Shown here in pieces: positions 36,642-64,000 of a DNA stretch of 64,000 nt; positions within the stretch are counted from its first letter, which is position 1; each line of letters opens with the position of its first letter. Location of the stretch: assembly GCA_965644495.1 (NCBI GenBank), contig CBFFSA010000009.1, positions 620,001 to 684,000 of the forward strand, given 5' to 3'. The position numbers and the translations under genes were made by a program. The DNA is from Perkinsela sp. CCAP 1560/9 (taxonomy: Eukaryota; Protista; Euglenozoa: Kinetoplastea). The notes under the pieces were generated by a model. That model did not search any database. It had not been told where the DNA came from and saw only the letters and a program-made list of their open reading frames with translations.

Positions 36642-36674
36642 CTTTAACGATAAAGATACAGTTTCTGTACCTTG
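36642..36674 (+). other. Relic spliced-leader exon at the 5' end of a CRE element
   Basis: CTTTAACGATAAAGATACAGTTTCTGTACCTTG shares GATACAGTTTCTGTAC with the trypanosomatid SL. No GT intron follows. Confidence 0.85.
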
Positions 36675-36709: not shown

Positions 36710-38410
36710 ATGGTTGTTTCTACTCGATCTAACACAAAACGGGACTCGAGCTTTGAACGTGAGGCAAATGACCACAAACTCGGGTCATGGGATCAATTCC
36801 AGGCGAACAAAGATCTCGTAAAAGGTGCGAGCACGTACGCCGAAGAATTGTATACGACGCCTCTTCCACCGTACCCTTCGCCCGAATCAACGCAGCGCGC
36901 CGACGAGATTGCGATCAGCATTACAAACTCTAGGGAAGGTGCAACTCCTGATACTGGACACGCGCAACCGAACTCGGAGGAGCAACTTTTCTCCAGAGTC
37001 CGTCCGACCGAGCAATCCGACGTCCAGTCTGAAGAAGCGGACTCTTCTACTTCGTCTTCTTGCCCCTCAGGTTTTCGATTCTTGGGAGCAGATGATCCTT
37101 CACCCAGCTAGTTAAAGTCATCCAACAAGGCTGTGAAGGAGCAGTGCATGCGTCATTTTCGGAAATCGGAAGGTCACCACTACACATATGATTCCAGTAT
37201 CCTAGCGTTTCCCGATCTCACACCTCCGAATCTGGACTTTTCTGTATCGAACGATCCGCAGAAACGCAAGAAAAAGAAACGACTCAAGCGGAACGTCACC
37301 TCCAAACCCCCAGGGAAGGACTTGGGCTCCGAGAGTAGCGATGAAACGACCACAGACCATACATCAACCCAAGAGAGTTGCGATTCCAGTGAGGTAAACC
37401 TCAAACGCCATCGAGTTCCCCCAGCCTCAGGAAAAGACGAGTCACATGCAAGCACGCCGACTAAAGCCCAATATGGCACCAGGAAATGTCCTGTGGAATA
37501 TTGTCCATGGCAAACAGGGTCACAAGGCAATCAGTGGTAAGTGTTTTACCATCACGTAGCCCGCAGACACGGGGAGGAAGTTTCGGAAGCGTGGTGGGCA
37601 GGAGAAAGGCGATTCCGATGCTCGGGATGCAACAGGCATTACTCTATATGTAAGCAAGAATACCACAAAAAGCATTGCAAGTTCCACTCACAATCATCTC
37701 AATGTCCAAATATCCATCTTGCCGACGCTAAGGACTCCACCGTATCATCCAGTAACATTACCACCAACCACGAACTTATTCAATCGCCAACTCATTTAGA
37801 ACAAGAACACGCACAGCCCAACGAGCGTACTGCGCGAGACACTCCAACAGGGGAAGATCTCCCGACCCTATCCTCAATCTCCGCCTAGCCTATAAATACG
37901 TGCAAGAACATTCCTAACACTTGTAAGGCCGAGTGGGCGAAAGCACTCACCGAATGCATGGCGACGGCCGTCTACGACAACACCATTGAAGCGTGGACAC
38001 TTCTGGCCATGTTACCGAAATGCGTGATTCCGGCACCACGCCGTGGTGGCGACAAGGGCAAAGCTTCGCACGCCTCCATTGTCCGAAAATGCCTCACCAG
38101 ATGGAAAAACAAGGAATATCAATCACTCTGGAATGAGGCGTCAGCAAGCATGAAGCGCAAGCACAAAAGCACCCCACAGATTCAGAGCATCGAAGAGGAG
38201 GATAGGAAAGCAGCGCTACGAGCAGTCCGCTTGGTGAGGGACGGAGAACTTTCCCGCGCGATGACCGCGCTAACCTCTGAACCACTTGCCCCCAACGATG
38301 ATACGACCTTCCACAAGCTGCAGGCGAAACATCCCTCCCGTCTTCTTGACCCGAGTCCGATCGCCACACTCCCTTCGGATATTAAACCTCTCACGGCCAC
38401 CGCAGAAGAC
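36710..38410 (+). pseudogene. CRE-clade non-LTR retrotransposon, 5' half (LsmAD, C2H2 fingers, pre-RT region)
   Basis: One frame with 3 stops, containing an LsmAD motif, CPVEYC...HVARRH, AWTLLAMLPKCVI..RGG and GELSRAMTAL...LQAKHP. Confidence 0.85.
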
Positions 38411-43187: not shown

Positions 43188-44334
43188 CAGGGGGGGCCAC
43201 GAAAACTGACTAGCTTCGCATTTTAGCCTCGTGAGGCCGTTTGAGCTAATTTTTGTTGCAAACGAGAGATCTCGTTCTGAATATCGTGTCTACGCTATTT
43301 AGAACTCGTTTGTATAAACCTGATATTTTGCATTTCGAAAATACTGAAATTTAAGACGATTTATTTTGCAAAAAGCATAAAAAATAGTAAAAAAGTTGGT
43401 TTTCTCTTCTTTTTTCTTCACTATGGGCAAGCGGCATAGATTAAACCGTTGCCAATTGTCCCCAGAGCAGTCTTCGTATTCCATACGCATTGTTTGCGCA
43501 CACGAAAGACATCGTGGTACAAGTATTGAAGACACGGCACGAATGATGAACTGTTCTGAGAGCTCTGTCTATCGGTACAAGGCACGTTTTGATGAGTCAG
43601 GTGACGTGGCACGTGCGAGCTACTCGCGCGATAATGCCGTTGATACGGAGGAATTCCGTGCTATGCTCTGTACCCTTGATGATGAGAAAGACACGCCATT
43701 CGGGTGTCCGGGGTTTAAATGGGTACACAAGAGAGTGGACAAGACACTTTATCCTTGTAGTCTGAACACCGTAAAACGGAGTTTGAAAAGGATGGGATAC
43801 GTCATTAAGACTATGTCACACAAACCTTTCTTAACTGCTGAGCACAAGGCTGCCCGATTACAACTTGCTGATTACTTCGATGGATGGAGTCCAGATCAGC
43901 TGTCCCGTGTGGTATGGTGTGACGAGAAGATTTTCCGATGTGGTTCACATGGGAAAAAAATCACATATCTTGCAAAAATCACTGACCCCCCCAAGGAAAC
44001 ACCAGTAGAAATGGATAGGTGGTACGGGGGGAAGGGAGTGCATGTATTCATGGCAACCAGTCTGCGTTGGGAAGTACCCGATGCGTGTTTCCACGAGTTT
44101 TCCCAGAATGAAACCGTAACAAACGAAGTTTTTCTGAGAACAATGAAGAAGCGAAATGGGTTTTTTAACTGGATGCATCGGCGGCCGGGGGCTGCTGTTG
44201 TCCTTGACAATGCGCCAGGGCACGGGGCAGCCCGGAGAATAGGTAAGCTGGAAGGAATTAAAATTATTGACTGGCCTTCGAAATCTCCTGATCTCAATTT
44301 GATTGAGAATTTGTGGAGTATGATGGATGTTTAA
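43188..44334 (+). mobile_element. Tc1-like transposon (right end missing); transposase at 43396-44334
   Basis: TA|CAGGGGGGGCC left end; HTH, WCDE, LDNAPGH and WPSKSPDLNLIENLW. Confidence 0.9.
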
Positions 44335-53430: not shown

Positions 53431-53610
53431 TATAAGCCGTCAATAGAATTTGCCCAGGGGGGATAACAAAAAAAAAATCCCCCCCAACCCCAAAGAAACA
53501 AAAAAAAATCATATTCCCCCCCCAATGGACCTTCATGGTTCATGTATTGGGTAATATAGAGGCAATGCCGCGTTTCATACTTCTCCCCCCTTATTAATCG
53601 CAAAAAAAAA

Positions 53611-53656
53611 GATAAAGATACAGTAACGATAATGATACAGTTTCTGTACCTTGTTG
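53611..53656 (+). other. Relic spliced leader with a partial tandem duplication
   Basis: A9 - GATAAAGATACAGT - AACGATAATGATACAGTTTCTGTACCTTGTTG. Confidence 0.85.
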
Positions 53657-54381
53657 AATTATTTTTTCTCCTTTTCTTTCCTACAACATCTTCCGAACCA
53701 TGGGAGGGCACCCCCCTCAAATTTTCTCTCTATTGTCGGCATCCCCCCTCCCTCTCTCGTCCCATCATTCCCCGGTGTCGTATCCCCCGACCTCTTCCTC
53801 TGCGCGCTCGTTGTTCTTCTGTCTTTCTCTCTTGCGTCCCCCACCCCCGTGCCAGCAGCCCAAATTATACTATACTTGCTCACGGGGTGGGGGCAGACCG
53901 ATTGGGCTGCGGCGTTGTTTCCCCTCGTCTCCGCGTCCGTCCCGCCATGTCTCTCTTTTCGCTTTTCCCCCTTGGCGCGACGGCGTCTTTGCGCTTCGTC
54001 TCCTCCTTGTCTCCCACCCTCGTACAGCAACCTAAAGTATCTGATACTGCTAACGGGGTGGGAGCGGAGGTCACCTCCACGTCTCCCACCCTCGTACAGC
54101 AACACAAAGTATCTTATATTGCTAACGGGGTGGGAGCGGAGGCTCTGGACCGCATGGGCCCCCGCGCGGACGAGTCGGTCAGTGGGGTAGGGCGTAAGTG
54201 GAGGAAGGGAAGGAAGTGTGATGAGGGGCAGGAAGTGGGGGAAGGAAGGAAGTAGGGTGAAAGCTTTTTGGGTGAAGGATTGTAAGTGTGGAGAGTAGGA
54301 AAGTTGGAAAAGTAGATAAAAACATTAGACTCAATACTACTCCCCCCAATTATTTGCAAAAAAAAAGACAAGAAAAAAAGA
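53657..54381 (+). mobile_element. SL-bracketed, A-tailed, apparently non-coding retro-module (SINE-like)
   Basis: Lies between two SL copies, ends in an A-rich tail, contains three related hairpins and has no convincing ORF. Confidence 0.55.
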
Positions 54382-54419
54382 AACTTTAACGATAAAGATA
54401 CAGTTTCTGTACCTTGTTG
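54382..54419 (+). other. Apparently full-length relic spliced-leader exon (38 nt)
   Basis: AACTTTAACGATAAAGATACAGTTTCTGTACCTTGTTG has the AACT start, conserved core and TTG end of the kinetoplastid 39-nt SL. Confidence 0.9.
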
Positions 54420-54447
54420 ACTTATTTTCTTTTTCTTCGTTAACTCC

Positions 54448-55880
54448 ATGGCAGACAGACCTCGCAACGGTTTACTGTTCTGCTCACTCTGCGGCTCGAA
54501 ATTCGAGCCCCTTCTCCCCTCCCATCGGCTGTGTGCAAAGTGCTTCGACACCGCTCGATCTACGTCGCAATCCCAAAGGGACAAACATAAACATCAACCG
54601 CTTGGGCCCGCCAATGGCGGATACAAGCAGAATGCTCTATCTCAGGGTGCAACCCTCTCTCCGGTCCCCGAGTATCCCCCGTGCAATTTTTGCACGAAGC
54701 CTTTCTCTCCCAGGCGACCCTTCCATCGCCTCTGCCCGGAATGTGTCGAGCTCAGGTCACAGCGCCAGGGCTCAGTAAACCCCCTTCCCTCATCCCGTCC
54801 AACCCCCAGGCGGGACCCCACACCAGGGCGCCGAGCTCGTTCGGCTTCCCGATCCCGCACCTCGGACCGCGCCCCCGCGCAGAATCGTCCCTCGGCTAGG
54901 TCGTCGAGCATCCGTCCAGCCGAAGGACCGCGCACGAGATCCCGCTCGCGTGTCTCCTTCGCGCCGAATGTCTCACCTAACTCGTCTGTCGCAAGCATGG
55001 CCAAGACTATGGCTTACCACAGCAATCTACCTCCTCCCAAAGGTACAGAAGGCCTTCAGGCCACCTCAATCCATAACCCCGACAAAGTTCCCTCCCACCA
55101 AGAGCAGCTTGCGACCATCGCCCAAAGAAACGCGGAGGTCCTGGCTGCGGTCTTCAAGCAGGAGCGCACGGACGGTGTGCCACCTGCACTTCGACATGAA
55201 GTGGAGGCACATAGATTTTCGAGCGCTGCCCGGGCCTTGGAGGCCCAATACGTGGGGAAGCGCGATGCCATCTTTGACGAGTGGCTTTCCCTGATGTGTC
55301 ACGACGCTCGTCAAGCACACAGAGAAAAACAACTCGTCGAGGACAAGGCACACCTGTGTCACACGTGTGGCCAAGTTTTCACAGACCAGAGGAAACTCAT
55401 GCAGCATAGAGCCATACACGAGCAGGCTGCAATCAGATCAGCTGCCATTAAACTGTTCCAGGAGCACCGCAAGGGGGTGTCAGAAATACTTAAGCAGCAG
55501 TGGACCTCTTGCGCAGCCGGCCACTCCGCCTGGTTCCAAGAGCTACGGCACATCGCGCTAACCTTCGGCGCCTCCCCCAGGCCTTCTGAAGCCAGGGGCT
55601 GTGACGTTGACGAGCCTCCTCCCCCCAGGGTAGATACCCCTTGGAATGAAAATCTCACCCACCCGGAGGTGAGCAGGTCCGCAGAAACTTGCCCGCCTCC
55701 CGCGCAGGACCCAAGTGACGATCAAACGATGGTGTTCAACCTACATCTAGGCCCTCACGCCGTAGGCAGAATTCAAGTTCCGGTCCCCGCGAACTGCCCC
55801 TTCCAAAGACTTGGCGAAATCATCGGTGCCACGTTGGGGATACCGATGCATCGAATCTGCCTTACGAGTGGGCCTGGTGG
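54448..55880 (+). CDS. Zinc-finger-rich ORF, probably the 5' part of a retroelement, truncated by the downstream element (the frame reads on to 56094)
   Basis: Two CxxC...HRLCxxC fingers, an RS-rich region and a C2H2 finger CHTC...HRAIH. Starts 28 nt after an SL. Confidence 0.6.
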
Positions 55881-55896
55881 GATACAGTACGAGTGG

Positions 55897-55919
55897 GATA
55901 CAGTTTCTGTACCTTGTTG
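55897..55919 (+). other. 5'-truncated relic spliced leader heading the HERO-like element
   Basis: GATACAGTTTCTGTACCTTGTTG, 27 nt before the ATG at 55947. Confidence 0.85.
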
Positions 55920-55946
55920 TTTTATTTCTTTATCGTTTAAATCTAC

Positions 55947-58900
55947 ATGGCGCGACACCGCGCGCAACGATCCCACTCGAATGCGCCGCAGGACCTTACA
56001 CGAGGACCACGCGGCGTTCGCAAGCAAAGCGCAACTCCCACCCATCCTGACGCCTCTTCCAACGAGAACGGAAGTACTCCCGACAATCTGCTAAACGTCA
56101 CGCAAACCGAGCATGTGACTGGCAATTCGGCGAATACCACCGCATCGTCCCCAGCGGAACCCTGTAAGCACAAGTGTCTGAATAAACGTGAATGCTTACA
56201 CTTGTGCTGCAAGCGTCACTTAACTGCGCAAAGTATAACGGATAGCGACACCGTAACATCACATACCGTTATGTCAAAGAAACGAAGGAATTTTGAAGTC
56301 TCCCCGCTTGCCATGGCCCGATCAATTATACTAGTATTCAGAACTCTCTACAACATGCGGAATATTGGCATCATCATATCTAACGTCTTCAGATGGATAT
56401 CTAGCCTCGCCGTTCACCTCCTAGTAGCACCCATCCGCGCAATCCCGTCACCCAACGCCCTCAATCCTTTCCGTCGAAATGTTGGCACACAAAGTATCAC
56501 GACAAAACCGTGTAGGCACATCTGTCTGAACAAAGTCACCTGCAAACACCCTTGTTGCAAACGTCATATACGACACTCCCAGAAGAAAGTCATAAATATG
56601 GTGCCAACAAACAATGGACCCTTTGGTCACGTACTACTAGTCATCACAAGGAACACTCAAACCCTATTGTCCCTATTAACAGGTTGGCTTTCTGAAGCAG
56701 CAAACCCATTACACATTGTCCAATGTATGAACATGGTATATGTGTGCACAGGTAGTACCATCAGGTTCATTACTTCTTCTTGCAGAAAAACGTATGACAT
56801 TTTCCGATCGCCTCTGCTTTTACTGCCCCGGATACGAATAATGCACGAGAAATTTTGTTCAAACGTCGCACGGTTGAAAAAGCAACCACTGAGCATGACC
56901 GCTCTTGACATCATGAAACTTGCACAACGAATAATTCTCTGGTATATCAGGCTTTTCTATATACAAGTAGACACTATGCCACAAAATGACGGAAAACCAG
57001 AACCCGCAACCACAAGCCCCACGAAACTATGCACATCATCCCAGCCATTCACGACTGCAGTCGAGAAAGAAAGCAATCCCTATTTACCAGCAAACCCAAC
57101 AGTCACGCTTAACCACAATGAGATGTACGAGGTGAAAAAGCTGACGGAAAAGCAAGAATTAATCATGCCTTGTCCCAGGGAACAGGAAGGAGAAAACGAT
57201 GAAGTCCCTGGCTGGGTATTTCAAAGCAGCGCGACACAGAACAGGGACGAATCCGCACCACCTGACACAAACCATGAACCACGGCAAAAGCAATACCTTC
57301 ACTTTGTCCAGAGCAGAGCCCGCCCCGTGAAAGTGCGAACAGTAGCAAACCTGATCTGGACATACTTTCCAGATATTCGAAGTGCCAGCGAATCTCCTCT
57401 CGTCCGGGCTAGAATAACCTCTCTCCAAGCAGCACAAGCGGCACTCTCGAAAATGTTATCTGGTAAAAGCAACTCTCATGACTTGGTTGTCGAGCCTTCC
57501 ACAACTGAAGAACTCATGGACCACCGCGGATGCGACTACATACATATCGAAGAACAAAATAGTCAACACATCAGTCGGCATGCCAGCTGGACATCCCTTC
57601 TCCAAGATAATACACTTAAACTCAACGAGAAGTATGCAACAGCGGGAGCACTAGGCCGTGCAGTCATGAAGGCGCTTAACGGAATGGATATACCACATCT
57701 CAGACATCTACGCATTACAGTACATCGAAGACTGGAGGAAGCGGAAGAAGTCAGTTACGAACGTATCTCACGCAGAGAAGCATCACCGAGTCGCATTCAA
57801 CAGAACCGTAGTGCACCGACACTGCGCACTGTACAGCCATGCCGCCACACGTGTCGAAACAAACTTGAGTGCGCACACCTATGTTGCAAAGTATTTGGGC
57901 CACCCTATGCACCAGGGAACGAAACCGGTTGTGAATCCCCAACAACAGTACCCAATAACATACATTCCCAAGTTGAACCCTCCACGCCGACAGTGCAATC
58001 TGACGCCTCTCAAAGTCAAAAAGCAGTAGAACTCCTGCAAAAGCACAATGCAATACTTGGCGGGAAGGTTACCATACGACTCAGCGAAGAGCAATGGCGA
58101 CAGGTTGAAGCGAGAGCAAGTGCACGTTGCAACGAACTTCTAAGCGATACAACGGACAGGAAGACAACTATACGTAACGCGGAACTTCTTAGCGCCGCCC
58201 TAGCCGTATCTGCTTACGAAATAGCGACGGAAGCGAATCCGACAAGGGGCTTCCTCATCAGAGCTAGCACCGGACACGCCCGACGAAGGTATCGACCACT
58301 CGCCACGGAGAGAGTCGCACAAGAACTGAAACACCATCTCACAACCTTGAAAATTTCGCTACGCTATACGAGAAGTAGGACGGAACGAGACGAATTACGA
58401 GCACAAATCAAAGAATGTCGAAAGCTAGTCAGGATACGTGAGGAAGAAGCGACGAAACAAAGAGAAGAAATCGATCAGCGCTGGGCCTCCGAGCGATTTT
58501 CCAGAAATCCGTGGACAGCAGCTTCAGAAACGATCGACAAACCTGACGCTAATGAAGTACAGAATACAACTTACCCGACCTGCGACCGGAACACCATAGA
58601 GACATACTTCGAGTCAAGCTTTAAACCCAGTGAAGAACTCTTCCAACTGCCTCCTCCAGATGTACTCGGACCAGGAGCCGCCCAACCCATGCATTGGGAC
58701 CCAATCACGCGAGACGATGTCACAGCAGCCATCAATATGAAACGGAACTCCAGCTCACCCGGTGCAGACACGATCACCAATCTGATTCTTAAGAAATGTC
58801 CATCCATGCATGATCAATTTGCTAAGGTATTCAATAATCTGATGACTTTCTCGACCTGCCCTCCATCATGGAAAACTGCAATCACTAGGCTGATACATAA

Positions 58901-60800
58901 GAGCGGAGCACCGGAAAACCCCAAAAATTGGCGCCCCATTTCACTGACGAGCGCCCTTGGTAAAGCGTTTCACACAATCATATCGCATCGCCTGACCCAA
59001 CATCTTATTGGACACAATGTGATTGACCCGGAAATACAGAAAGGGTTTCTTCCCGAAATCAATGGGACATTGGAGCACACCCAAACTCTATGCACCCTCC
59101 TCCAGCACTACCAGCGACATAAACGACAGTACTGTCTTGCCCAATTGGACCTCACTAACGCCTTTGGTTCGATCCCGTATAACATTATACTAGCTTCCCT
59201 AGGTTGGGCAGGCATACCCTGCAACGTTGTCGACTACATCAAAGACAGCCTCACTGATGCACACATACGAGTTAAATGTTACGAAGGTCTAACGCGTCCC
59301 ATACATGTAAAGAAGGGAGTCTTACAAGGCGATACACTCTCTCCCACTATATTCTTAGTAGTCATGGAAATCGTATTACGATACGTTCGGTTCTCGTGTC
59401 CAACCTTTGGCATGCGCCTTCCCAACGGCGATAACAACTTCTTGAAAGCGTATGCCGATGATTTAACCATTCTGACCGAAAGTGACCGTGACATGCAAAC
59501 TTCGCTGAACGCACTAACCACGGTGCTCTCCAAAATCGGATTAAAAATCAACGTCACAAAAAGTCGAGTCCAATGTATGAGCACGCGGAAAGGCGAAGAG
59601 CACCCGGGGTACATGACGAGAAGACCTGCAGTAACCACATACGGAGAAAAAATTCCACATATTTGTGACGCCGGAAGCTCATTTCTTGGTATGACCCTCG
59701 CCCCTGGATCTCAGCAGCTAAACGAACTTTTCAAGAAATTAAACTCAAAGCTGAAGGGATGGCTCGAAAACACGAGTGCCAGCGCCCATAATCTCCCGGC
59801 TAAGCTGTGGATCTACAGACACGCTATAATTTCCCGACTTCGGTTTCAGTTTACCATCCACCCCTGCATCTCTTTCAGCTCAGTTCTGCGGCTTCAGAAG
59901 CGAGTCACAGCACACATTCGACGATGGATTAACATGGCTCGTGCCGGTAGCACAGAAGTACTATACTCCTGCCGCGGCTGGAATCTCAAAAGTCTGACAC
60001 AACTCTGGTACGAGTGCACCGGAACGTCACTTACCCAAATGCATCAATCACGAGACCCGAACGTGCTCAAGGCATTGCGCTTCCGCATCCAGGAAGAGCA
60101 AAGGAAGCGTGCGAAAGGTCAAATCCGCCCAGCTGCACAGATAACCGATCATCTTAACGACCCACAGCGCGCACGACAAATACTCCGTGATGCCCACGAA
60201 GAACAAATGATTACACGTCTACGACAACGTGCTCCTGTTGCTGCCCTCTGGTGGCAGTTTCCGTCAGACCCAGAAATGGCACAAGAATTTGCATCTGCCA
60301 TCCATGGGATCCGAAACGAGAAACTCTCGCGATTCATGTCCTCCGTCATGACTCTAACCCCCCTGCCCTCCCGAGTATCCCTTGCACAATGGGGTCGCAA
60401 CTATCACTCTGATACAAAATGTCCCATATGCCGAGACAAACCACAAACAACAAGACACGTCCTTTCATCATGCAACACATCCTTACAACAAGGGAGGTAC
60501 ACACTAAGACACGACATGGTTCTCCGCGAGTTCGCACGACACGTACGCCAATCCCCTGCCACCGAAGCTTGCCACTTTGACCTCACGGGTGAACGGAACC
60601 CACCCCCGTGGTACACCAGTAGCGACCGTTTACTGCGCCCGGATGGCTGGATCAAACTACGGAACGGGACCGAGTTCATCATTGAGCTAACTGTCCCGTG
60701 GGAGGAGAACTGCGAAAACGCACACCGGCGGAAGTCAGAGAAGTATAACTCACTTCCCCACGAGCGCAGAATCGAGAACCCGAACTGCTACGCTAAATAA
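55947..60800 (+). CDS. Single-ORF RLE non-LTR retrotransposon (HERO/NeSL-like) polyprotein, uninterrupted 1617 aa
   Basis: RT (SSPGAD, NWRPISL, QKGF, LDLTNAFGSI, GVLQGDTLSP, AYADDL), CCHC knuckle CPIC...HVLSSC, GRYTLRHD, and RLE RPDG...IELTVPWEEN...KY. Confidence 0.93.
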   Translation: MARHRAQRSHSNAPQDLTRGPRGVRKQSATPTHPDASSNENGSTPDNLLNVTQTEHVTGNSANTTASSPAEPCKHKCLNKRECLHLCCKRHLTAQSITDSDTVTSHTVMSKKRRNFEVSPLAMARSIILVFRTLYNMRNIGIIISNVFRWISSLAVHLLVAPIRAIPSPNALNPFRRNVGTQSITTKPCRHICLNKVTCKHPCCKRHIRHSQKKVINMVPTNNGPFGHVLLVITRNTQTLLSLLTGWLSEAANPLHIVQCMNMVYVCTGSTIRFITSSCRKTYDIFRSPLLLLPRIRIMHEKFCSNVARLKKQPLSMTALDIMKLAQRIILWYIRLFYIQVDTMPQNDGKPEPATTSPTKLCTSSQPFTTAVEKESNPYLPANPTVTLNHNEMYEVKKLTEKQELIMPCPREQEGENDEVPGWVFQSSATQNRDESAPPDTNHEPRQKQYLHFVQSRARPVKVRTVANLIWTYFPDIRSASESPLVRARITSLQAAQAALSKMLSGKSNSHDLVVEPSTTEELMDHRGCDYIHIEEQNSQHISRHASWTSLLQDNTLKLNEKYATAGALGRAVMKALNGMDIPHLRHLRITVHRRLEEAEEVSYERISRREASPSRIQQNRSAPTLRTVQPCRHTCRNKLECAHLCCKVFGPPYAPGNETGCESPTTVPNNIHSQVEPSTPTVQSDASQSQKAVELLQKHNAILGGKVTIRLSEEQWRQVEARASARCNELLSDTTDRKTTIRNAELLSAALAVSAYEIATEANPTRGFLIRASTGHARRRYRPLATERVAQELKHHLTTLKISLRYTRSRTERDELRAQIKECRKLVRIREEEATKQREEIDQRWASERFSRNPWTAASETIDKPDANEVQNTTYPTCDRNTIETYFESSFKPSEELFQLPPPDVLGPGAAQPMHWDPITRDDVTAAINMKRNSSSPGADTITNLILKKCPSMHDQFAKVFNNLMTFSTCPPSWKTAITRLIHKSGAPENPKNWRPISLTSALGKAFHTIISHRLTQHLIGHNVIDPEIQKGFLPEINGTLEHTQTLCTLLQHYQRHKRQYCLAQLDLTNAFGSIPYNIILASLGWAGIPCNVVDYIKDSLTDAHIRVKCYEGLTRPIHVKKGVLQGDTLSPTIFLVVMEIVLRYVRFSCPTFGMRLPNGDNNFLKAYADDLTILTESDRDMQTSLNALTTVLSKIGLKINVTKSRVQCMSTRKGEEHPGYMTRRPAVTTYGEKIPHICDAGSSFLGMTLAPGSQQLNELFKKLNSKLKGWLENTSASAHNLPAKLWIYRHAIISRLRFQFTIHPCISFSSVLRLQKRVTAHIRRWINMARAGSTEVLYSCRGWNLKSLTQLWYECTGTSLTQMHQSRDPNVLKALRFRIQEEQRKRAKGQIRPAAQITDHLNDPQRARQILRDAHEEQMITRLRQRAPVAALWWQFPSDPEMAQEFASAIHGIRNEKLSRFMSSVMTLTPLPSRVSLAQWGRNYHSDTKCPICRDKPQTTRHVLSSCNTSLQQGRYTLRHDMVLREFARHVRQSPATEACHFDLTGERNPPPWYTSSDRLLRPDGWIKLRNGTEFIIELTVPWEENCENAHRRKSEKYNSLPHERRIENPNCYAK

Positions 60801-61506
60801 AAAGGGTTATCCCGTTGTATGCGGGCCTTACCCTGAAAACTCTCTGCTATTATGCAATAATAACTCATGAACAAACAAACCCTACCTACAGTCGCAGGAG
60901 GACTTTGCCTCCACCGAGAGTATTTGGATATCGCTTTCAATCCCTCACCATGGGTCGTCCTACGCCCCCCACGTCTTGGTGTATGACGACACCGGGCACG
61001 GTGTATTACAAACTGATGGCCACATGTCAGAAGGGAACATCCCTTTCTACCTCTGTCGCGCCCTGGACGATAAAGATACATTATCACAGGCTTCATAAAC
61101 ACGCTTGATACCGGTCCCAAGCCCGGCGTCGTCTTCTTAACAAGACGAAGTGTGAGGGTGAAGAGTTTTATTGTACGATAAGGTACGACTTTTTTTTTAA
61201 TATATTTGTCCATCTCTTCGTTTGTTAAACATACAGATATGTTGAACATACTGATTTATTTGAACATACAGGTTTGTTGAATATACACACTATAATCCTT
61301 GGTTCCGACCCAAAGATAGGATATAAATTTTATTTACATGTTGACATGCTATGTGGAACCGAGCCTGGCACTAAATTAGTGATTTTATTCCGGTTCGTTT
61401 TGGCCCTGACCGGGGAAAACATACCGTTCGGCGCCAAAATGAACTACTTCGAGGAAATTTGTGACTCACGGTCGACGATTATTATTATTATAATAACAAT
61501 TTATTA

Positions 61507-62021
61507 TTTGCCTCGAGGTCTTTCGGGACTGACGGTTGGCACTTCACCTTGAGGTTCCTCGGAACTGACGGTTGGTGGTTATACTTTGCCTCGAGGTCCT
61601 TCGGGACTGACGGTTGGCACTTCACCTCGAGGTTCTTCGTAACTGACGGTTCGTGGTTTTACTTTGCCTCGAGGTCCTTCGGGACTGACGGTTGGCACTT
61701 CACCTCGAGGTTCTTCGGAACTGACGGTTCGTGGTTTTACTTTGCCTCGAGGTCCTTCGGGACTGACGGTTGGCACTTCACCTCGAGGTTCTTCGGAACT
61801 GACGGTTGGTGGTTATACTTTGCCTCGAGGTCCTTCGGGACTGACGGTTGGCACTTCGCCTCGAGGTTCTTCGGAATTGACGGTTGGTGGTTATACTTTG
61901 CCTCGAGGTCCTTCGGGACTGACGGTTGGCACTTCACCTCGGGGTTCTTCGGAACTGACGGTTGGTGGTTACACTTTGCCTCGAAGTCCTTCAGGACTGA
62001 CGGTTGGCACTTCACTTCGAG
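61507..62021. repeat. 78-bp tandem repeat (~6.6 units; each a dimer of 36- and 42-bp subunits)
   Basis: tttgcctcga recurs at 61507, 61585, 61663, 61741, 61819, 61897 and 61975. Confidence 0.95.
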
Positions 62022-62380
62022 TGATCATTGAGGATTGGCTTCTCGTAGTCGTAAATTTAATGATTATTGTAAGCAAATATTGCTGATCATCACACAGTAC
62101 CACTGCTGTCTGTGTTGCTTTCCAGGGTACTGGAAGTAATGAAAAAAAATGGATAGAAAGAAAAAAAAATGGATTTGCCAGTGTGACGCACCTTATACGA
62201 CTTGCGCAGTCGGGTCAGTTTTGCACTGCGTTCATTATTCCACGGATTTCGAATGCAATGCCTTTACGGCTACGCATCTGTGTGAAGTATCTAATAAAAG
62301 ATGCTCAACAGATTCCACGCCCCTTAGAGTTTTGTCTCACGTTTGAAAACCTAGAATGATGACAAGAAGGGGAGGAGGGA

Positions 62381-62565
62381 GCTGATCTGCGGTGCCAATG
62401 GGTATTCCTGTCACTGGGCTTGGTCCCGGTATCAAGGTGCTTATGAAGCCTGTGATAATGAGGGTGTTGCCAATCCCTGGTCAGTAATCGGCCCAGGGAC
62501 ATAGCAACTCCCCATTATCTCGGGCGTAGTAAACACGCCTTGGCTTGCCTGGCACTGAGATCAGC
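62381..62565. ncRNA. Candidate structured RNA / dispersed repeat of unknown class
   Basis: Closing stems GCTGATCT/AGATCAGC and GTGCCA/TGGCAC, a long internal hairpin, and homologous segments at 26760-26861 and (inverted) 61079-61125. Confidence 0.45.
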
Positions 62566-62875
62566 CATTGGAAAAAAACAAAGACGAAAGAATAGAAAGC
62601 AGAAAAAAAAAATACAGAAGGCGTATGTATAGATGAATACATTAGTTTCGCCGATTGCTTGAAGTAGTAAGGAAAAAGAGCGAGAGAGAAAACAGAGAGA
62701 AACAGGAATATGCTGACATAAAGCAGTCAGCAAGTATCCATATTCTGGCGAGCGTGAGGGTGGAAATACAGAAAGGGTGAATATAGAATGAGAGAGCAAA
62801 GATGACCAGGATAAGTCACAACCGTATCTAATCTATTAAAACATGCATAGGAACTTGCTCTAAATTTTATTTCTT

Positions 62876-63814
62876 ATGCCGAAGAAACGACCCTCCGTAG
62901 CTACCTCACTCCAAGCTTCACAAAGCCGCTCAGTTCCTATAGTCGGCCACACTCACCACTTTGACGCAAACGTCGATAGCGTAGTCGACCAGGCATGCTC
63001 GACGAAAACGAGCATAAAAATTTCTCTACGTTTTGAGCGCGCAGTCGATGTGAATCTCCTTGTCAAATTTATGGCGGAAATCAGCGAAGACGAATGCGCA
63101 AGTGCAATCATGGATTTCGTTGAAAAGGTATTAGGGGGAGAAACCCTCAGTGAAAAAGCAAGTTTTACAGCCAAACTTTTGGGTGTCCGCCGAACACAGG
63201 ACGTCTCCGAATTCGAGAATTTGATTGGAAACGAAGAACATCGAGGAATTTTGGTTTCCCTCATGCTGGACCCCCCGAAGGAGCCAAAGAAAATGAAAGC
63301 ACGGGAAGGAGAAAAGGAGGACGGGCAACTTACTGTATGGACAGGCACGGAGAATCGTCCTCACCTTGGAGGGCAACTGTGGGAAGCAGTGCACAACCCG
63401 AAGTTTCAAAAATGGGCCGAAAGCTTTCTTCTAACCCGCTACGCTATTTTCTTCAAGGAGATGCTTACGCAAGCAGGAAAAGGTGTATCCCCCAAGGCGG
63501 CACAAGAAAACAAGGCGGTATCAATAGCAGCTAACCATTTCCTTCTAGAACTCGCTGCTCATTTTCTTGTGTTCCGCGCCGATTTTGACGACGTAAAGAA
63601 AGAGGAATCTCTTCTTCTTTGCCGCAAGAACGTCGGATTGCTCCCAGAGACCGACTCCGTAACTATACCGGAGACTCTTTTGAAGGCGAAATCCTTCCAA
63701 AATAGTACTTCAGGCTATGGACGGGGAGGCATGGTCCAAAACAACAGAAGAACATTTGGGCCGGATGTGCGTTATTTCAACCGCCCGCGACCAGTAAATT
63801 TGTATGCCCCTTGA
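62876..63814 (+). CDS. Hypothetical protein, possibly a gag-like ORF of a YR retroelement
   Basis: Clean 312-aa ORF with a helical middle and an R/G/N-rich C-terminus like the gag ends of the VIPER-like copies. No diagnostic motif. Confidence 0.4.
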   Translation: MPKKRPSVATSLQASQSRSVPIVGHTHHFDANVDSVVDQACSTKTSIKISLRFERAVDVNLLVKFMAEISEDECASAIMDFVEKVLGGETLSEKASFTAKLLGVRRTQDVSEFENLIGNEEHRGILVSLMLDPPKEPKKMKAREGEKEDGQLTVWTGTENRPHLGGQLWEAVHNPKFQKWAESFLLTRYAIFFKEMLTQAGKGVSPKAAQENKAVSIAANHFLLELAAHFLVFRADFDDVKKEESLLLCRKNVGLLPETDSVTIPETLLKAKSFQNSTSGYGRGGMVQNNRRTFGPDVRYFNRPRPVNLYAP

Positions 63815-64000
63815 TCTTATCGTTCTAATCGAGAAGGGTTCGTCAAAGGCCTAGAACGGCCAGAAAAGTTTTCTCGGGAAATGAACGATCGAAAGAATAA
63901 ACATGAAAAGGGGCCGTGATTGCCGATCTTGGGGGCAATAGATGTATGTTTTAGTTTTTCTTAATCAGATTCATGTTTGGGCTGAACATAGAGCACGAAT

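What the first reader, a model, noticed from the sequence alone, without database searches (positions are those of the whole stretch)
53611..60800. Stack of spliced-leader-capped retro-modules: SL relics as 5' ends and probable landing pads
Seen: an SL-like exon occurs at 53625-53656, 54382-54419 and 55897-55919 (also 36642-36674). No copy is followed by a GT intron; each is followed by a pyrimidine-rich leader. Three of the four lead to a retroelement ATG 27-35 nt later, and three sit just downstream of an A-run. The result is a head-to-tail train: A-tail|SL-noncoding module-A-tail|SL-ZnF ORF|SL-HERO. Known: kinetoplastid mRNAs receive a 39-nt SL by trans-splicing; CRE/SLACS/CZAR insert into SL RNA genes; relic SLs mark retroposed mRNAs in dinoflagellates. 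Inference: different RLE clades here are trans-spliced, copied back with their SL, and each genomic SL relic becomes a new target for SL-specific elements. That would be a self-seeding cycle outside the SL RNA gene array.
Basis: partly seen in the sequence, partly recalled or inferred. Interest (0 to 1): 0.9.

Follow-up and report, generated by a model that had tools for sequence, protein, structure and literature searches.

The report
Spliced-leader-headed retroelement stack
A pile-up of retrotransposon copies that each begin with the organism's own 38-nt spliced leader, which is unreported for this group as far as I could search; these leader relics are not the landing site of the stacked elements, but they are the exclusive integration site of a different, recombinase-type retroelement sitting right beside the stack.

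Summary
The 19-nt core of the leader is exact at 36656, 53635, 54398 and 55898, against 0.02 expected by chance. It occurs 539 times in this 21-Mb genome. Two tandem genes with a GT intron and an adjacent 5S rRNA gene identify it as the real spliced leader (SL).

What the stack contains:
- a truncated poly(A) retroposon, then a SINE-like element A;
- a LINE-like element B;
- an R2-like (RT plus restriction-like endonuclease) element C.

C did not land on an SL. It sits inside B's ORF, because an intact B copy elsewhere joins 55883 directly to 60882.

Solitary copies of A are flanked by duplications made of an A-run plus a few bases. The "A-tail|SL" junctions therefore reflect insertion into A-runs, not targeting of the SL.

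The landing-pad idea does hold for another element. From 61081, a DIRS/VIPER-like tyrosine-recombinase retroelement (D') splits an SL relic exactly between nt 21 and 22, with no duplication. Ten of 11 outer left ends and 9 of 10 outer right ends genome-wide lie in SL relics.

No RNA or read evidence could be obtained. Other first-stage notes on this genome reported SL-headed elements, but none had been followed up.

The parts
36642..36674 (+). SL nt 3-35 heading a degraded LINE-like element whose ORF1 (36710-37111) has an LsmAD-like domain
   Evidence: Pfam LsmAD at 23.9 bits, just under the cut-off. The same ORF1 type heads several other SL-headed families, one of them over the cut-off.
53505..53610 (+). 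5'-truncated 97-nt copy of a poly(A) retroposon family (Z) plus its A9 tail. It has no SL head.
   Evidence: at least 10 copies. Other copies extend further 5'. About half of the Z tails are followed by an SL head and half by unrelated DNA.
53611..53624 (+). Stray SL nt 10-23 fragment (5' 'stutter') in front of the head of A
   Evidence: About 20 comparable double heads exist genome-wide, with variable break points.
53625..54366 (+). Element A, SINE-like: SL nt 7-38 (53625-53656), leader, conserved ATG at 53700, body, A9 tail (54358-54366)
   Evidence: at least 40 scored copies at 75-95% identity; 582 first-look candidates. 3' ends, TSDs, ORF test.
54367..54381 (+). A-rich spacer between the tail of A and the head of B
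   Evidence: Similar A-rich strings precede other heads.
54382..55883 (+). Element B, 5' part: complete SL nt 1-38 (54382-54419), 28-nt leader, zinc-finger ORF1 from 54448
   Evidence: A 94%-identical intact copy lies at C1:1598010-1601194 (L060), where ORF1 is followed by a second ORF.
55884..55896 (+). 13-nt filler at the 5' junction of C, built from snippets of the flanking B sequence
   Evidence: from comparison with intact B.
55897..60881 (+). Element C, an R2-like non-LTR retrotransposon nested in B: SL nt 16-38 (55897-55919), leader, 1617-aa ORF (55947-60800) with three Cys/His fingers, RT and a C-terminal CCHC + PD..E..K endonuclease motif, 3' UTR without poly(A)
   Evidence: RVT_1 at 4.5e-29. 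Motifs read. Best solved relatives are R2 proteins. Nearest named proteins are R2-type. Other copies have different SL extents and different flanks.
60882..61066 (+). Continuation of element B after the C insertion. B is then cut off.
   Evidence: in L060, 55883 and 60882 are adjacent, with no duplication and no loss.
61067..61080 (+). SL nt 8-21: left half of the SL head of a further retroelement (zinc-finger ORF1 family 3), split by D'
   Evidence: The right half (nt 22-38, then leader and ATG) follows the D' end at window-equivalent 73151.
61081..64000 (+). Left 2.9 kb of D', a tyrosine-recombinase retroelement that runs to window-equivalent 73150. Contains 78-bp tandem repeats (61429-62130) and ORF1 (62876-63814).
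   Evidence: Downstream ORFs: a recombinase-like ORF and an RT/RNase H ORF.
62416..62578 (-). Internal complementary region of D': the inverted copy of its last 120 nt joined to the inverted copy of its first 44 nt (a circle-junction image)
   Evidence: The same junction occurs in 10 other D' copies.

Best explanation
The 38-nt motif (window:54382-54419) is this kinetoplastid-type organism's spliced leader. The region is a pile-up of retroposed copies, each made from an RNA that carried the SL at its 5' end.

Order of the pieces:
- a truncated poly(A) retroposon Z;
- the SINE-like element A;
- the LINE-like element B;
- a later insertion of the R2-like element C into B's ORF1;

How it works, shown:
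- The heads are RNA-derived and are not pieces of SL genes.
- The poly(A)-type elements integrate into A-runs and duplicate them, so poly(A) tails of older copies attract new copies and trains form.
- C integrates elsewhere, with a blunt, microhomology-patched 5' junction.
- D' integrates between SL nt 21 and 22 without duplication or loss. It uses SL relics as its attachment site.

Inferred:
- The SL reached the element RNAs by ordinary trans-splicing.
- D' integrates as a circle through its tyrosine recombinase.
For: SL identity:
- Tandem genes with a GT intron, three stem-loops and a conserved upstream region, next to a 5S rRNA gene.

RNA origin of the heads:
- 539 copies of the core, only 2 with the gene's upstream sequence.
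- 249 heads start at nt 3, others at nt 7-23.
- Six retro-copies of unspliced SL RNA start at nt 3-5 and end in an A-run.
- At least 14 unrelated families carry the same invariant SL although their bodies cannot be aligned with each other. All sampled ORFs are transposon-type.

A-run targeting:
- TSDs are an A-run plus TCTAAA (C1:1473638) or an A-run plus TGAA (C29:83133). Every A copy is preceded by an A-run.
- About 40% of 78 distinct nt-3 heads directly follow a run of at least 8 A.

Nesting of C:
-.

D':
- 10 of 11 outer 5' ends follow SL ...nt 21. 9 of 10 outer 3' ends are followed by SL nt 22-38.
- Paired ends give elements of 3-7.4 kb. In the window's contig the two SL halves fit together exactly.
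- It has an internal complementary region.
- ORF1 is shared by the 98%-identical copies.
- The recombinase ORF has SAM-like domain hits and R...HxxR...Y motifs.
- The RT/RNase H ORF has 1030 relatives. Of the 30 aligned sequences (the ORF plus 29 relatives), 16 hit RVT_1.
Against:
- No copy of the common leader was found with an AG acceptor in place of the SL. The source genes expected under trans-splicing are therefore missing.
- The base before nt 3 is T in about 80% of informative heads, whereas the gene has A. This is unexplained.
- About 20 heads carry an extra partial SL in front. In one case this lies inside the TSD, which simple trans-splicing plus full-length copying does not predict.
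- One junction (C2:561415) looks like a poly(A)-only insertion into an SL with a 13-15-nt duplication. Occasional TPRT insertion into the A-rich 5' half of the SL is therefore not excluded.
- The D' recombinase is frameshifted in this copy, scores below Pfam cut-offs, and PF00589 found no hit inside D' copies.
Confidence: 0.75

Rival explanations
1. The stacked elements are SL-specific (CRE/SLACS-like) and each landed on the SL relic of the element downstream, so the upstream member of each pair is the newcomer and relics seed further insertions of the same kind.
For: - A-tail|SL junctions are very frequent: 9 of 26 A tails abut an SL head.
- A recurrent junction is an A-run followed by SL nt 9 onward: 19 of 23 heads that start at nt 7.
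- C2:561415 has SL nt 3-21, A9, then SL nt 7-38, as expected for a fully truncated insertion with an SL duplication.
Against: - Solitary A copies have A-run TSDs and no SL on their 3' side.
- After the tail of A in the window comes a complete SL nt 1-38, not the remainder of a split SL.
- C sits in an ORF, and other C copies have unrelated flanks.
- SL relics are almost always intact: 249 of 267 through nt 22.
- The nt 7-9 junctions fit microhomology between an A-run and the AA at SL nt 7-8.
Confidence: 0.08
2. The SL head is not re-acquired by trans-splicing at each cycle. It is encoded and inherited: the SL plus the pyrimidine-rich leader acts as an internal promoter and cap-acceptor module, analogous to Pr77 of trypanosomatid retroposons, so SL-headed copies transcribe themselves from the relic.
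For: - No SL-less copy of the common leader with an upstream AG exists.
- Every full-length A copy carries the SL.
- Many families share the leader start AATTATTT.
- T replaces A at SL nt 2 in about 80% of heads, but is G in two SL RNA retro-copies.
- A double head lying inside a TSD implies an RNA that began at an incomplete outer SL.
- Pr77 recruits SL-gene transcription factors in trypanosomatids (PMC8190864, abstract seen).
Against: - The SL is identical in at least 14 families whose bodies are unalignable, while their leaders diverge. This is easier to explain by fresh addition from SL RNA.
- SL RNA itself is retro-copied with the same nt 3-5 starts.
- Promoters of kinetoplastid SL genes lie upstream of the exon (general knowledge).
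- There are no expression data.
Confidence: 0.2
3. Artefact: cDNA contamination or misassembly created SL-headed sequences that are not in the genome.
For: No read-level check was possible. The only other record of this locus is the same assembly (0 mismatches in 11,125 bases).
Against: - Hundreds of copies are embedded in multi-hundred-kb contigs.
- Copies differ from one another by 2-25% and have TSDs.
- Nested insertions have intact paralogous sites.
- SL halves separated by 3-12 kb of D' fit together exactly.
Confidence: 0.02

Closest known systems
Relic spliced leaders on dinoflagellate retrogenes (PMC6050394, PMC5585692, PMC12014239)
   Same: A DNA-encoded SL at the 5' end marks copies made from trans-spliced RNA, and is used there as a tag of retroposition.
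   Different: Here the tagged copies are transposons (LINE-like, SINE-like) and SL RNA itself. No host-gene retrocopy appeared among about 35 sampled heads. The organism has a kinetoplastid-type SL. The relics then serve a second element as its integration site.
SL-gene-specific non-LTR retrotransposons CRE1/CRE2, SLACS, CZAR and NeSL-1 (site nt 11/12 recalled from general knowledge; listed as target-specific RLE elements in PMC4640811)
   Same: The SL sequence is a fixed-position integration target. C shares the RT plus restriction-like endonuclease design.
   Different: A, B and C are not inserted in SL sequence. The SL-specific element here (D') is a tyrosine-recombinase retroelement. It cuts at nt 21|22, makes no duplication, and all mapped targets are dispersed relics, not the two SL RNA genes. 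No SLACS or CZAR protein appeared among the relatives of C (the search is word-limited).
Pr77 hallmark of trypanosomatid retroposons (PMC1874656, PMC8190864)
   Same: A short 5' module shared by autonomous and non-autonomous retroposon families.
   Different: Here the shared module is the SL itself plus a loosely conserved pyrimidine-rich leader. Promoter activity is untested.
DIRS1-type and VIPER/TATE tyrosine-recombinase retrotransposons (PMC6681497)
   Same: D' has three ORFs: one without known domains, a recombinase, and RT/RNase H. It also has an internal region complementary to the start of the left end and the end of the right end, and it makes no target duplication.
   Different: Strict specificity for the SL at nt 21|22 is not described in that paper (no occurrence of 'spliced leader', 'target site' or 'insertion site'). 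D' shows no detectable similarity to the other recombinase elements of this window. Its RT motif C reads YDN.
R2 retrotransposons (solved structures 8gh6, 8ibw, 9nl2)
   Same: The RT of C is closest to R2 proteins, and its C-terminus has the CCHC and PD..E..K motifs.
   Different: C is not in rDNA and shows no shared target in 2-3 copies. It carries an SL head and three CxHxCxNKxxCxHxCC fingers at its N-terminus.

Membership tests
Kinetoplastid-type SL RNA gene (for the 38-mer) | Exon followed by a GT 5' splice site within a short, structured RNA of about 100 nt that ends at a T-run | tested here: met
   Exon followed by GTATGAG, three predicted stem-loops, TTATTT after about 105 nt.
Kinetoplastid-type SL RNA gene (for the 38-mer) | Tandem gene copies with a conserved upstream (promoter) region | tested here: met
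   Two copies 297 bp apart with identical upstream sequence, next to a 5S rRNA gene. Only two copies are present in the assembly.
Kinetoplastid-type SL RNA gene (for the 38-mer) | The leader is found on the 5' ends of mRNAs | not testable with these tools
No RNA data.
Retroposed SL relic (copy of an SL-bearing RNA) | SL at the extreme 5' end of a unit bounded by TSDs and/or a poly(A) tail, without the SL gene's flanks | tested here: met
Retroposed SL relic (copy of an SL-bearing RNA) | A source gene with a polypyrimidine-AG acceptor where the copies carry the SL | tested here: not met
   No such copy was found for the AATTATTT-type leader. The pattern was exact and its anchor loses about 25% of sites.
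CRE/SLACS/CZAR-type SL-specific insertion (for A, B, C) | Element interrupts an SL exon at a fixed position, with the two SL parts on either side | tested here: not met
   The tail of A is followed by a complete SL. C lies in B's ORF. TSDs are A-runs.
RLE-bearing non-LTR retrotransposon (for C) | RT domain followed by a CCHC motif and a PD-(D/E)xK endonuclease at the C-terminus | tested here: met
   RVT_1 at 4.5e-29. Motifs read in the translation. R2 proteins are the best solved matches. The endonuclease fold itself was not modelled.
HERO clade (for C) | Placement with HERO reference RTs in a phylogeny | not tested
   No reference sequences were available. The nearest named relatives are R2-type and unnamed insect proteins.
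Tyrosine-recombinase (DIRS/VIPER-like) retroelement (for D') | RT/RNase H ORF | tested here: met
   The 585-aa ORF has 1030 relatives at E<=1e-3. Of the 30 aligned sequences (the ORF plus 29 relatives), 16 hit RVT_1. Invariant RT and RNase H acidic residues are present. The ORF itself scores 22.9 bits, below the cut-off.
Tyrosine-recombinase (DIRS/VIPER-like) retroelement (for D') | Tyrosine recombinase ORF with the R..HxxR..Y catalytic residues | tested here: inconclusive
   SAM-like N-terminal domain at E=2.3e-4, below the cut-off. ALRPCE, HTLRH and KHY motifs were read across a frameshift. PF00589 gave no hit inside D' copies.
Tyrosine-recombinase (DIRS/VIPER-like) retroelement (for D') | Internal region complementary to both termini, and no target duplication | tested here: met
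   (120 nt at 100% plus 44 nt at 91%). The SL halves abut at nt 21 and 22.

The most novel reading that the evidence does not exclude
A two-tier transposon ecology combined with an encoded leader. In this reading the SL heads are inherited, self-transcribing modules that give LINE- and SINE-like elements a cap-ready 5' end without trans-splicing. Their spread has sown about 500 copies of a 38-nt sequence, and a tyrosine-recombinase retroelement family has adopted that sequence as its only attachment site (nt 21|22). One class of mobile element would thus create the genomic niche of another. The second half is largely shown here. The first half, an encoded self-promoting SL, is the untested part.
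Probability: 0.2. Interest if true: 0.85.

Novelty: new variant of a known kind. Interest (0 to 1): 0.72.

Why it matters
- **Rarity.** SL relics as tags of retroposition are known from dinoflagellates, and SL RNA genes as transposon targets from trypanosomatids and nematodes. Here both occur together in one small genome. Full-text searches found no report of either for Euglenozoa outside the SL gene array.
- **A built-in marker.** The relics mark the true 5' end of retroelement RNAs. This makes the question of how transposons obtain a translatable 5' end in an organism that trans-splices every mRNA directly testable.
- **A possible record of cap-proximal base modifications.** Most heads start at nt 3, and T takes the place of A at nt 2.
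- **A defined recombination system.** D' offers a natural recombinase with a 38-nt target and a known crossover point. It is also a clear case of one transposon class creating the integration sites of another.

Tried and rejected
- **SL 16-mer in the literature.** No paper holds it.
- **Organism identification through the UTP15-like host gene.** Blank.
- **Rfam.** No SL RNA family matched. Only the 5S rRNA gene was found.
- **Source copies with an AG acceptor in front of the common leader.** None found.
- **SL broken exactly after nt 21, apart from D'.** Only about 9 exact cases, several of them point variants.
- **Target specificity of C.** Flanks differ between copies, so none is evident.
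- **PF00589 inside D' copies.** None. The top 150 RVT_1 hits include no D' RT, only a nested LINE on the opposite strand.
- **Similarity of D' ORFs to the other recombinase elements of the window and to solved structures.** None.
- **SL head at 36642 as a processed copy of a host Ataxin-2-like gene.** Considered and rejected. The same LsmAD-type ORF1 heads several diverged multi-copy transposon families.
- **RT jumping onto the free SL exon as the source of the heads.** Considered and thought unlikely. It is not excluded.
- **Genome DNA allowance.** Later flanks were read from pattern matches, and from the public contig that holds the window's own ORF.
Full report
**1. Observation**

The 19-nt core of the motif is exact at 36656, 53635, 54398 and 55898 on the + strand. 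Shuffles give 0.02 matches.

A seed-and-extend map against the full leader gives:
- SL nt 3-35 at 36642-36674;
- nt 10-23 at 53611-53624, followed directly by nt 7-38 (one mismatch) at 53625-53656;
- the complete nt 1-38 at 54382-54419;
- nt 16-38 at 55897-55919;

None is followed by GT. Each full 3' end is followed by a pyrimidine-rich leader and an ATG.

**2. Is it the spliced leader?**

The genome is 21.0 Mb in 110 contigs. It holds 539 copies of the core (at most 1 mismatch) and none of the reversed control.

At C1:~661 kb two copies lie 297 bp apart. They have identical upstream sequence, and the full exon is followed by GTATGAG. The RNA folds into three stem-loops and ends at TTATTT after about 105 nt. 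A 5S rRNA gene (99 bits) lies beside them. The core CAGTTTCTGTAC is the one shared by kinetoplastid and diplonemid leaders (my knowledge).

**3. Six further 'exon + intron' copies are retro-copies of unspliced SL RNA**

They have unrelated upstream DNA. They begin at nt 3-5. They end at ...GGGGCTTA followed by an A-run, where the real gene continues into its T-run.

**4. Classes of dispersed copies**

- About 112 copies belong to a 500-560-bp repeat without poly(A). It starts at SL nt 8-17 (mode nt 11) and keeps 'TTG|GTAC'.
- The rest are SL + leader + ATG heads.
- In about 260 kb of sampled DNA the heads fall into at least 14 families that cannot be aligned with each other.
- Their ORFs are all transposon-type: RT, RNase H, zinc-finger ORF1 or LsmAD-like ORF1. 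No host-gene retrocopy was seen.
- 249 heads contain SL nt 3-22 exactly. About 23 start at nt 7, and 19 of these follow an A-run. Others start at nt 11, 15, 16 or 23.
- This graded 5' truncation, together with poly(A) tails and TSDs, is what copies of an RNA whose 5' end is the SL should look like.

**5. The stack in the window**

- *Z.* 53505-53610 is a 5'-truncated Z copy with an A9 tail.
- *A.* 53625-54366 is element A. Its family has at least 40 scored copies at 75-95% identity, including typical 5'-truncated members.
- *B.* 54382-55883 is the 5' part of B.
- *C.* 55884-60881 is C.
- *B again.* 60882-61066 is B again.

The nesting of C in B is proven by L060 (C1:1598010-1601194). There B runs from the equivalent of 54401 through 55883 straight into 60882-61066 and beyond, at 94-98% identity. 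B there has a second ORF.

The insertion of C caused neither duplication nor loss. Its 5' junction has a 13-nt filler made of snippets of the neighbouring B sequence, and microhomology at GAT.

C has RVT_1. Its C-terminus has a CCHC motif followed by RPDG...IIELT...K..KY. Its best solved relatives are R2 proteins, and its nearest named relatives are R2-type. Other C-family copies carry different amounts of SL and have different 3' flanks.

**6. Why A-runs precede SL heads**

For A copies with both ends in hand, the flanks repeat:
- an A-run plus TCTAAA at C1:1473638;
- an A-run plus TGAA at C29:83133;
- an A-run plus GTTTTA at C13:419696;
- an A-run alone in the other copies.

Every A copy is preceded by an A-run, including copies with no retroelement upstream. 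The machinery that moves A therefore targets A-runs and duplicates them. Poly(A) tails of earlier copies are simply abundant A-runs.

Supporting counts:
- 9 of 26 independent A tails are followed by another SL head, and the others by unrelated DNA.
- Z tails split about evenly between the two.
- Among 78 distinct contexts of nt-3 heads, about 40% directly follow a run of at least 8 A.
- SL relics are rarely interrupted: SL nt 3-16 occurs 267 times and nt 3-22 occurs 249 times.

This does not fit 'landing on the SL' as the origin of the trains. One junction (C2:561415: nt 3-21, A9, nt 7-38) could be a fully truncated insertion into the A-rich half of an SL, so rare events of that kind are not excluded.

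**7. Where the landing-pad idea is right**

At 61081 a repeat begins (5' end TTATCACAG...). Its left flank is SL nt 8-21.

Reading the flanks of all copies by pattern search gives the following.
- Of 21 true 5' ends, 10 follow SL ...nt 21, 10 are an internal junction (see below), and 1 follows an SL-like site.
- Of about 20 true 3' ends (...CACCCTCA), 9 are followed by SL nt 22-38 plus the leader of some SL-headed element, and 10-11 are the internal junction.
- The left flanks are retro-copied heads: T + nt 3-21, A-run + nt 9-21, or nt 8-21 and nt 11-21. None is an SL gene.
- The ends pair up into elements of 3.0, 3.5, 6.4 and 7.4 kb.

The 7.4-kb copy (C1:1601156-1608541) splits the head of the very B copy used above as the intact reference. 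Meanwhile the B copy in the window has an unsplit SL.

The public contig that holds the window (L061, identical over 11,125 bases) shows the right end of this D' at window-equivalent 73150. It is followed by SL nt 22-38, a leader and the ATG of a zinc-finger ORF1 element. The two halves make SL nt 8-38 with nothing lost or duplicated.

**8. What D' is**

- Its last 120 nt (100% identity) and first 44 nt (91%) are present, inverted and juxtaposed, at 62416-62578. PMC6681497 describes such an internal complementary region for DIRS-type elements.
- It encodes ORF1 (312 aa, no known domain), which is shared at 98% identity by the C1 and C8 copies and at 25-52% by a wider superfamily lying next to similar ends.
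- It encodes an ORF with sub-threshold phage-integrase SAM-like hits and readable R...HxxR...Y motifs across a frameshift.
- It encodes a 585-aa RT/RNase H ORF with 1030 relatives. Of the 30 aligned sequences (the ORF plus 29 relatives), 16 hit RVT_1.
- In this copy an R2-like LINE with its own SL head (nt 15-38) is nested on the opposite strand.

Integration of a circle by conservative recombination at ...CA| would give exactly the observed junctions. That step is inferred.

**9. Open points**

- *Missing source genes.* No copy of the common leader carries an AG acceptor instead of the SL. Either such sources are few and differ in sequence, or SL-headed copies are themselves the sources. The invariant SL across unalignable families favours fresh addition. 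The missing sources, the shared AATTATTT leader start and a double head lying inside a TSD favour inheritance.
- *T at nt 2.* The base before nt 3 is T, often AT, in about 80% of informative heads, whereas the gene has AA. Two SL RNA retro-copies have G. This could be a misreading of a modified cap-proximal base or an encoded difference.
- *Double heads.* About 20 heads carry extra partial SL pieces with variable break points.

**10. Literature**

Searches found relic SLs only for dinoflagellates and other alveolates. They also found the Pr77 hallmark and VIPER/TATE for kinetoplastids. Nothing was found on SL-headed transposons or an SL-specific recombinase element in Euglenozoa.

Several first-stage notes on other windows of this genome describe SL-headed elements. 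None had been followed up.

**11. Verdict**

- The reading 'SL-capped RNA copied back' is well supported.
- The reading 'relics are landing pads for the stacked elements, self-seeding' is not supported.
- The reading 'relics are landing pads' is supported for a different element class, D', immediately next to the stack.

Noticed in passing
G000 C1:393086, C1:1167800, C1:1778582 and about 110 more; none in the window: A 500-560-bp dispersed repeat without poly(A). It begins at SL nt 8-17 (mode nt 11) and keeps the exon/intron junction as TTG|GTAC, followed by a small hairpin. It looks like an SL-RNA-derived SINE. D' inserts into its SL part as well.
   Followed up: partly
L051, L054-L058 (C1:410099, C2:801598, C20:10941, C25:23932, C49:34383, C86:12043): Retro-copies of the whole unspliced SL RNA. 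They start at nt 3-5, end at ...GGGGCTTA plus an A-run, and have unrelated upstream DNA.
   Followed up: yes
L004:2222-2340: A 5S rRNA gene (99 bits) lies beside the only two SL RNA genes that keep the conserved upstream region. The assembly holds just two such genes, so the array may be collapsed.
   Followed up: partly
window 53700-54035 and 25 other copies of element A: The 'non-coding' SINE-like element A has a conserved ATG and a proline/serine-rich frame of 150-174 aa. The frame is open in 18 of 26 copies (5 and 3 for the other frames). Its coding status is unresolved.
   Followed up: partly
genome-wide, listed: The base before SL nt 3 is T (often AT) in about 80% of heads that do not follow an A-run, whereas the SL gene has AA. 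Two SL RNA retro-copies have G. This may be a reverse-transcription signature of a modified cap-proximal base, or an encoded difference.
   Followed up: partly
for example C1:1473638, C1:3103802, C4:369044, C8:50819, C38:70374; window 53611-53624: About 20 heads carry one or two extra partial SL 5' pieces in tandem, with break points at nt 13-25. At C1:1473638 the double head lies inside the TSD, so it was already in the RNA or was made during copying.
   Followed up: partly
C16:159299-237449, C10:74659, C2:928535 and others: One SL head (ORF starting MGVFTRSKAK) has the same 17-nt upstream sequence in at least 17 copies, some spaced about 3.76 kb apart. Here the relic sits inside a larger unit that was amplified at the DNA level. 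At C1:1467-1468 kb two SL-headed ORFs lie 1.2 kb apart within that unit.
   Followed up: no
window 36710-37111; L041:1919-3118; L049:3127-3939: Several SL-headed LINE families have an ORF1 with an LsmAD-like domain (Ataxin-2/PBP1 type; 23.9-25.9 bits). This is an unusual ORF1 type.
   Followed up: partly
window 61429-62130: Seven to nine tandem units of 78 bp lie inside the left part of D'.
   Followed up: no
L061:12560-17545 (window-equivalent about 65435-70420), minus strand: An R2-like LINE related to C, with a head of SL nt 15-38 and no poly(A), is nested in D' between its recombinase and RT ORFs.
   Followed up: partly
whole genome: There are 1072 first-look RVT_1 candidates and 53 phage-integrase-type matches in 21 Mb. 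This is an unusually transposon-dense small genome.
   Followed up: no
window 43396-44334: An ORF with DDE_3 and HTH domains (Tc1/mariner-type transposase) lies in the transposon-rich stretch upstream of the finding.
   Followed up: no
window 53838-54136: Element A contains repeated hairpins whose loops include GTACAG and GTATCT, the complements of SL nt 26-31 and nt 15-20. Another first-stage note flagged this. It was not tested here.
   Followed up: no
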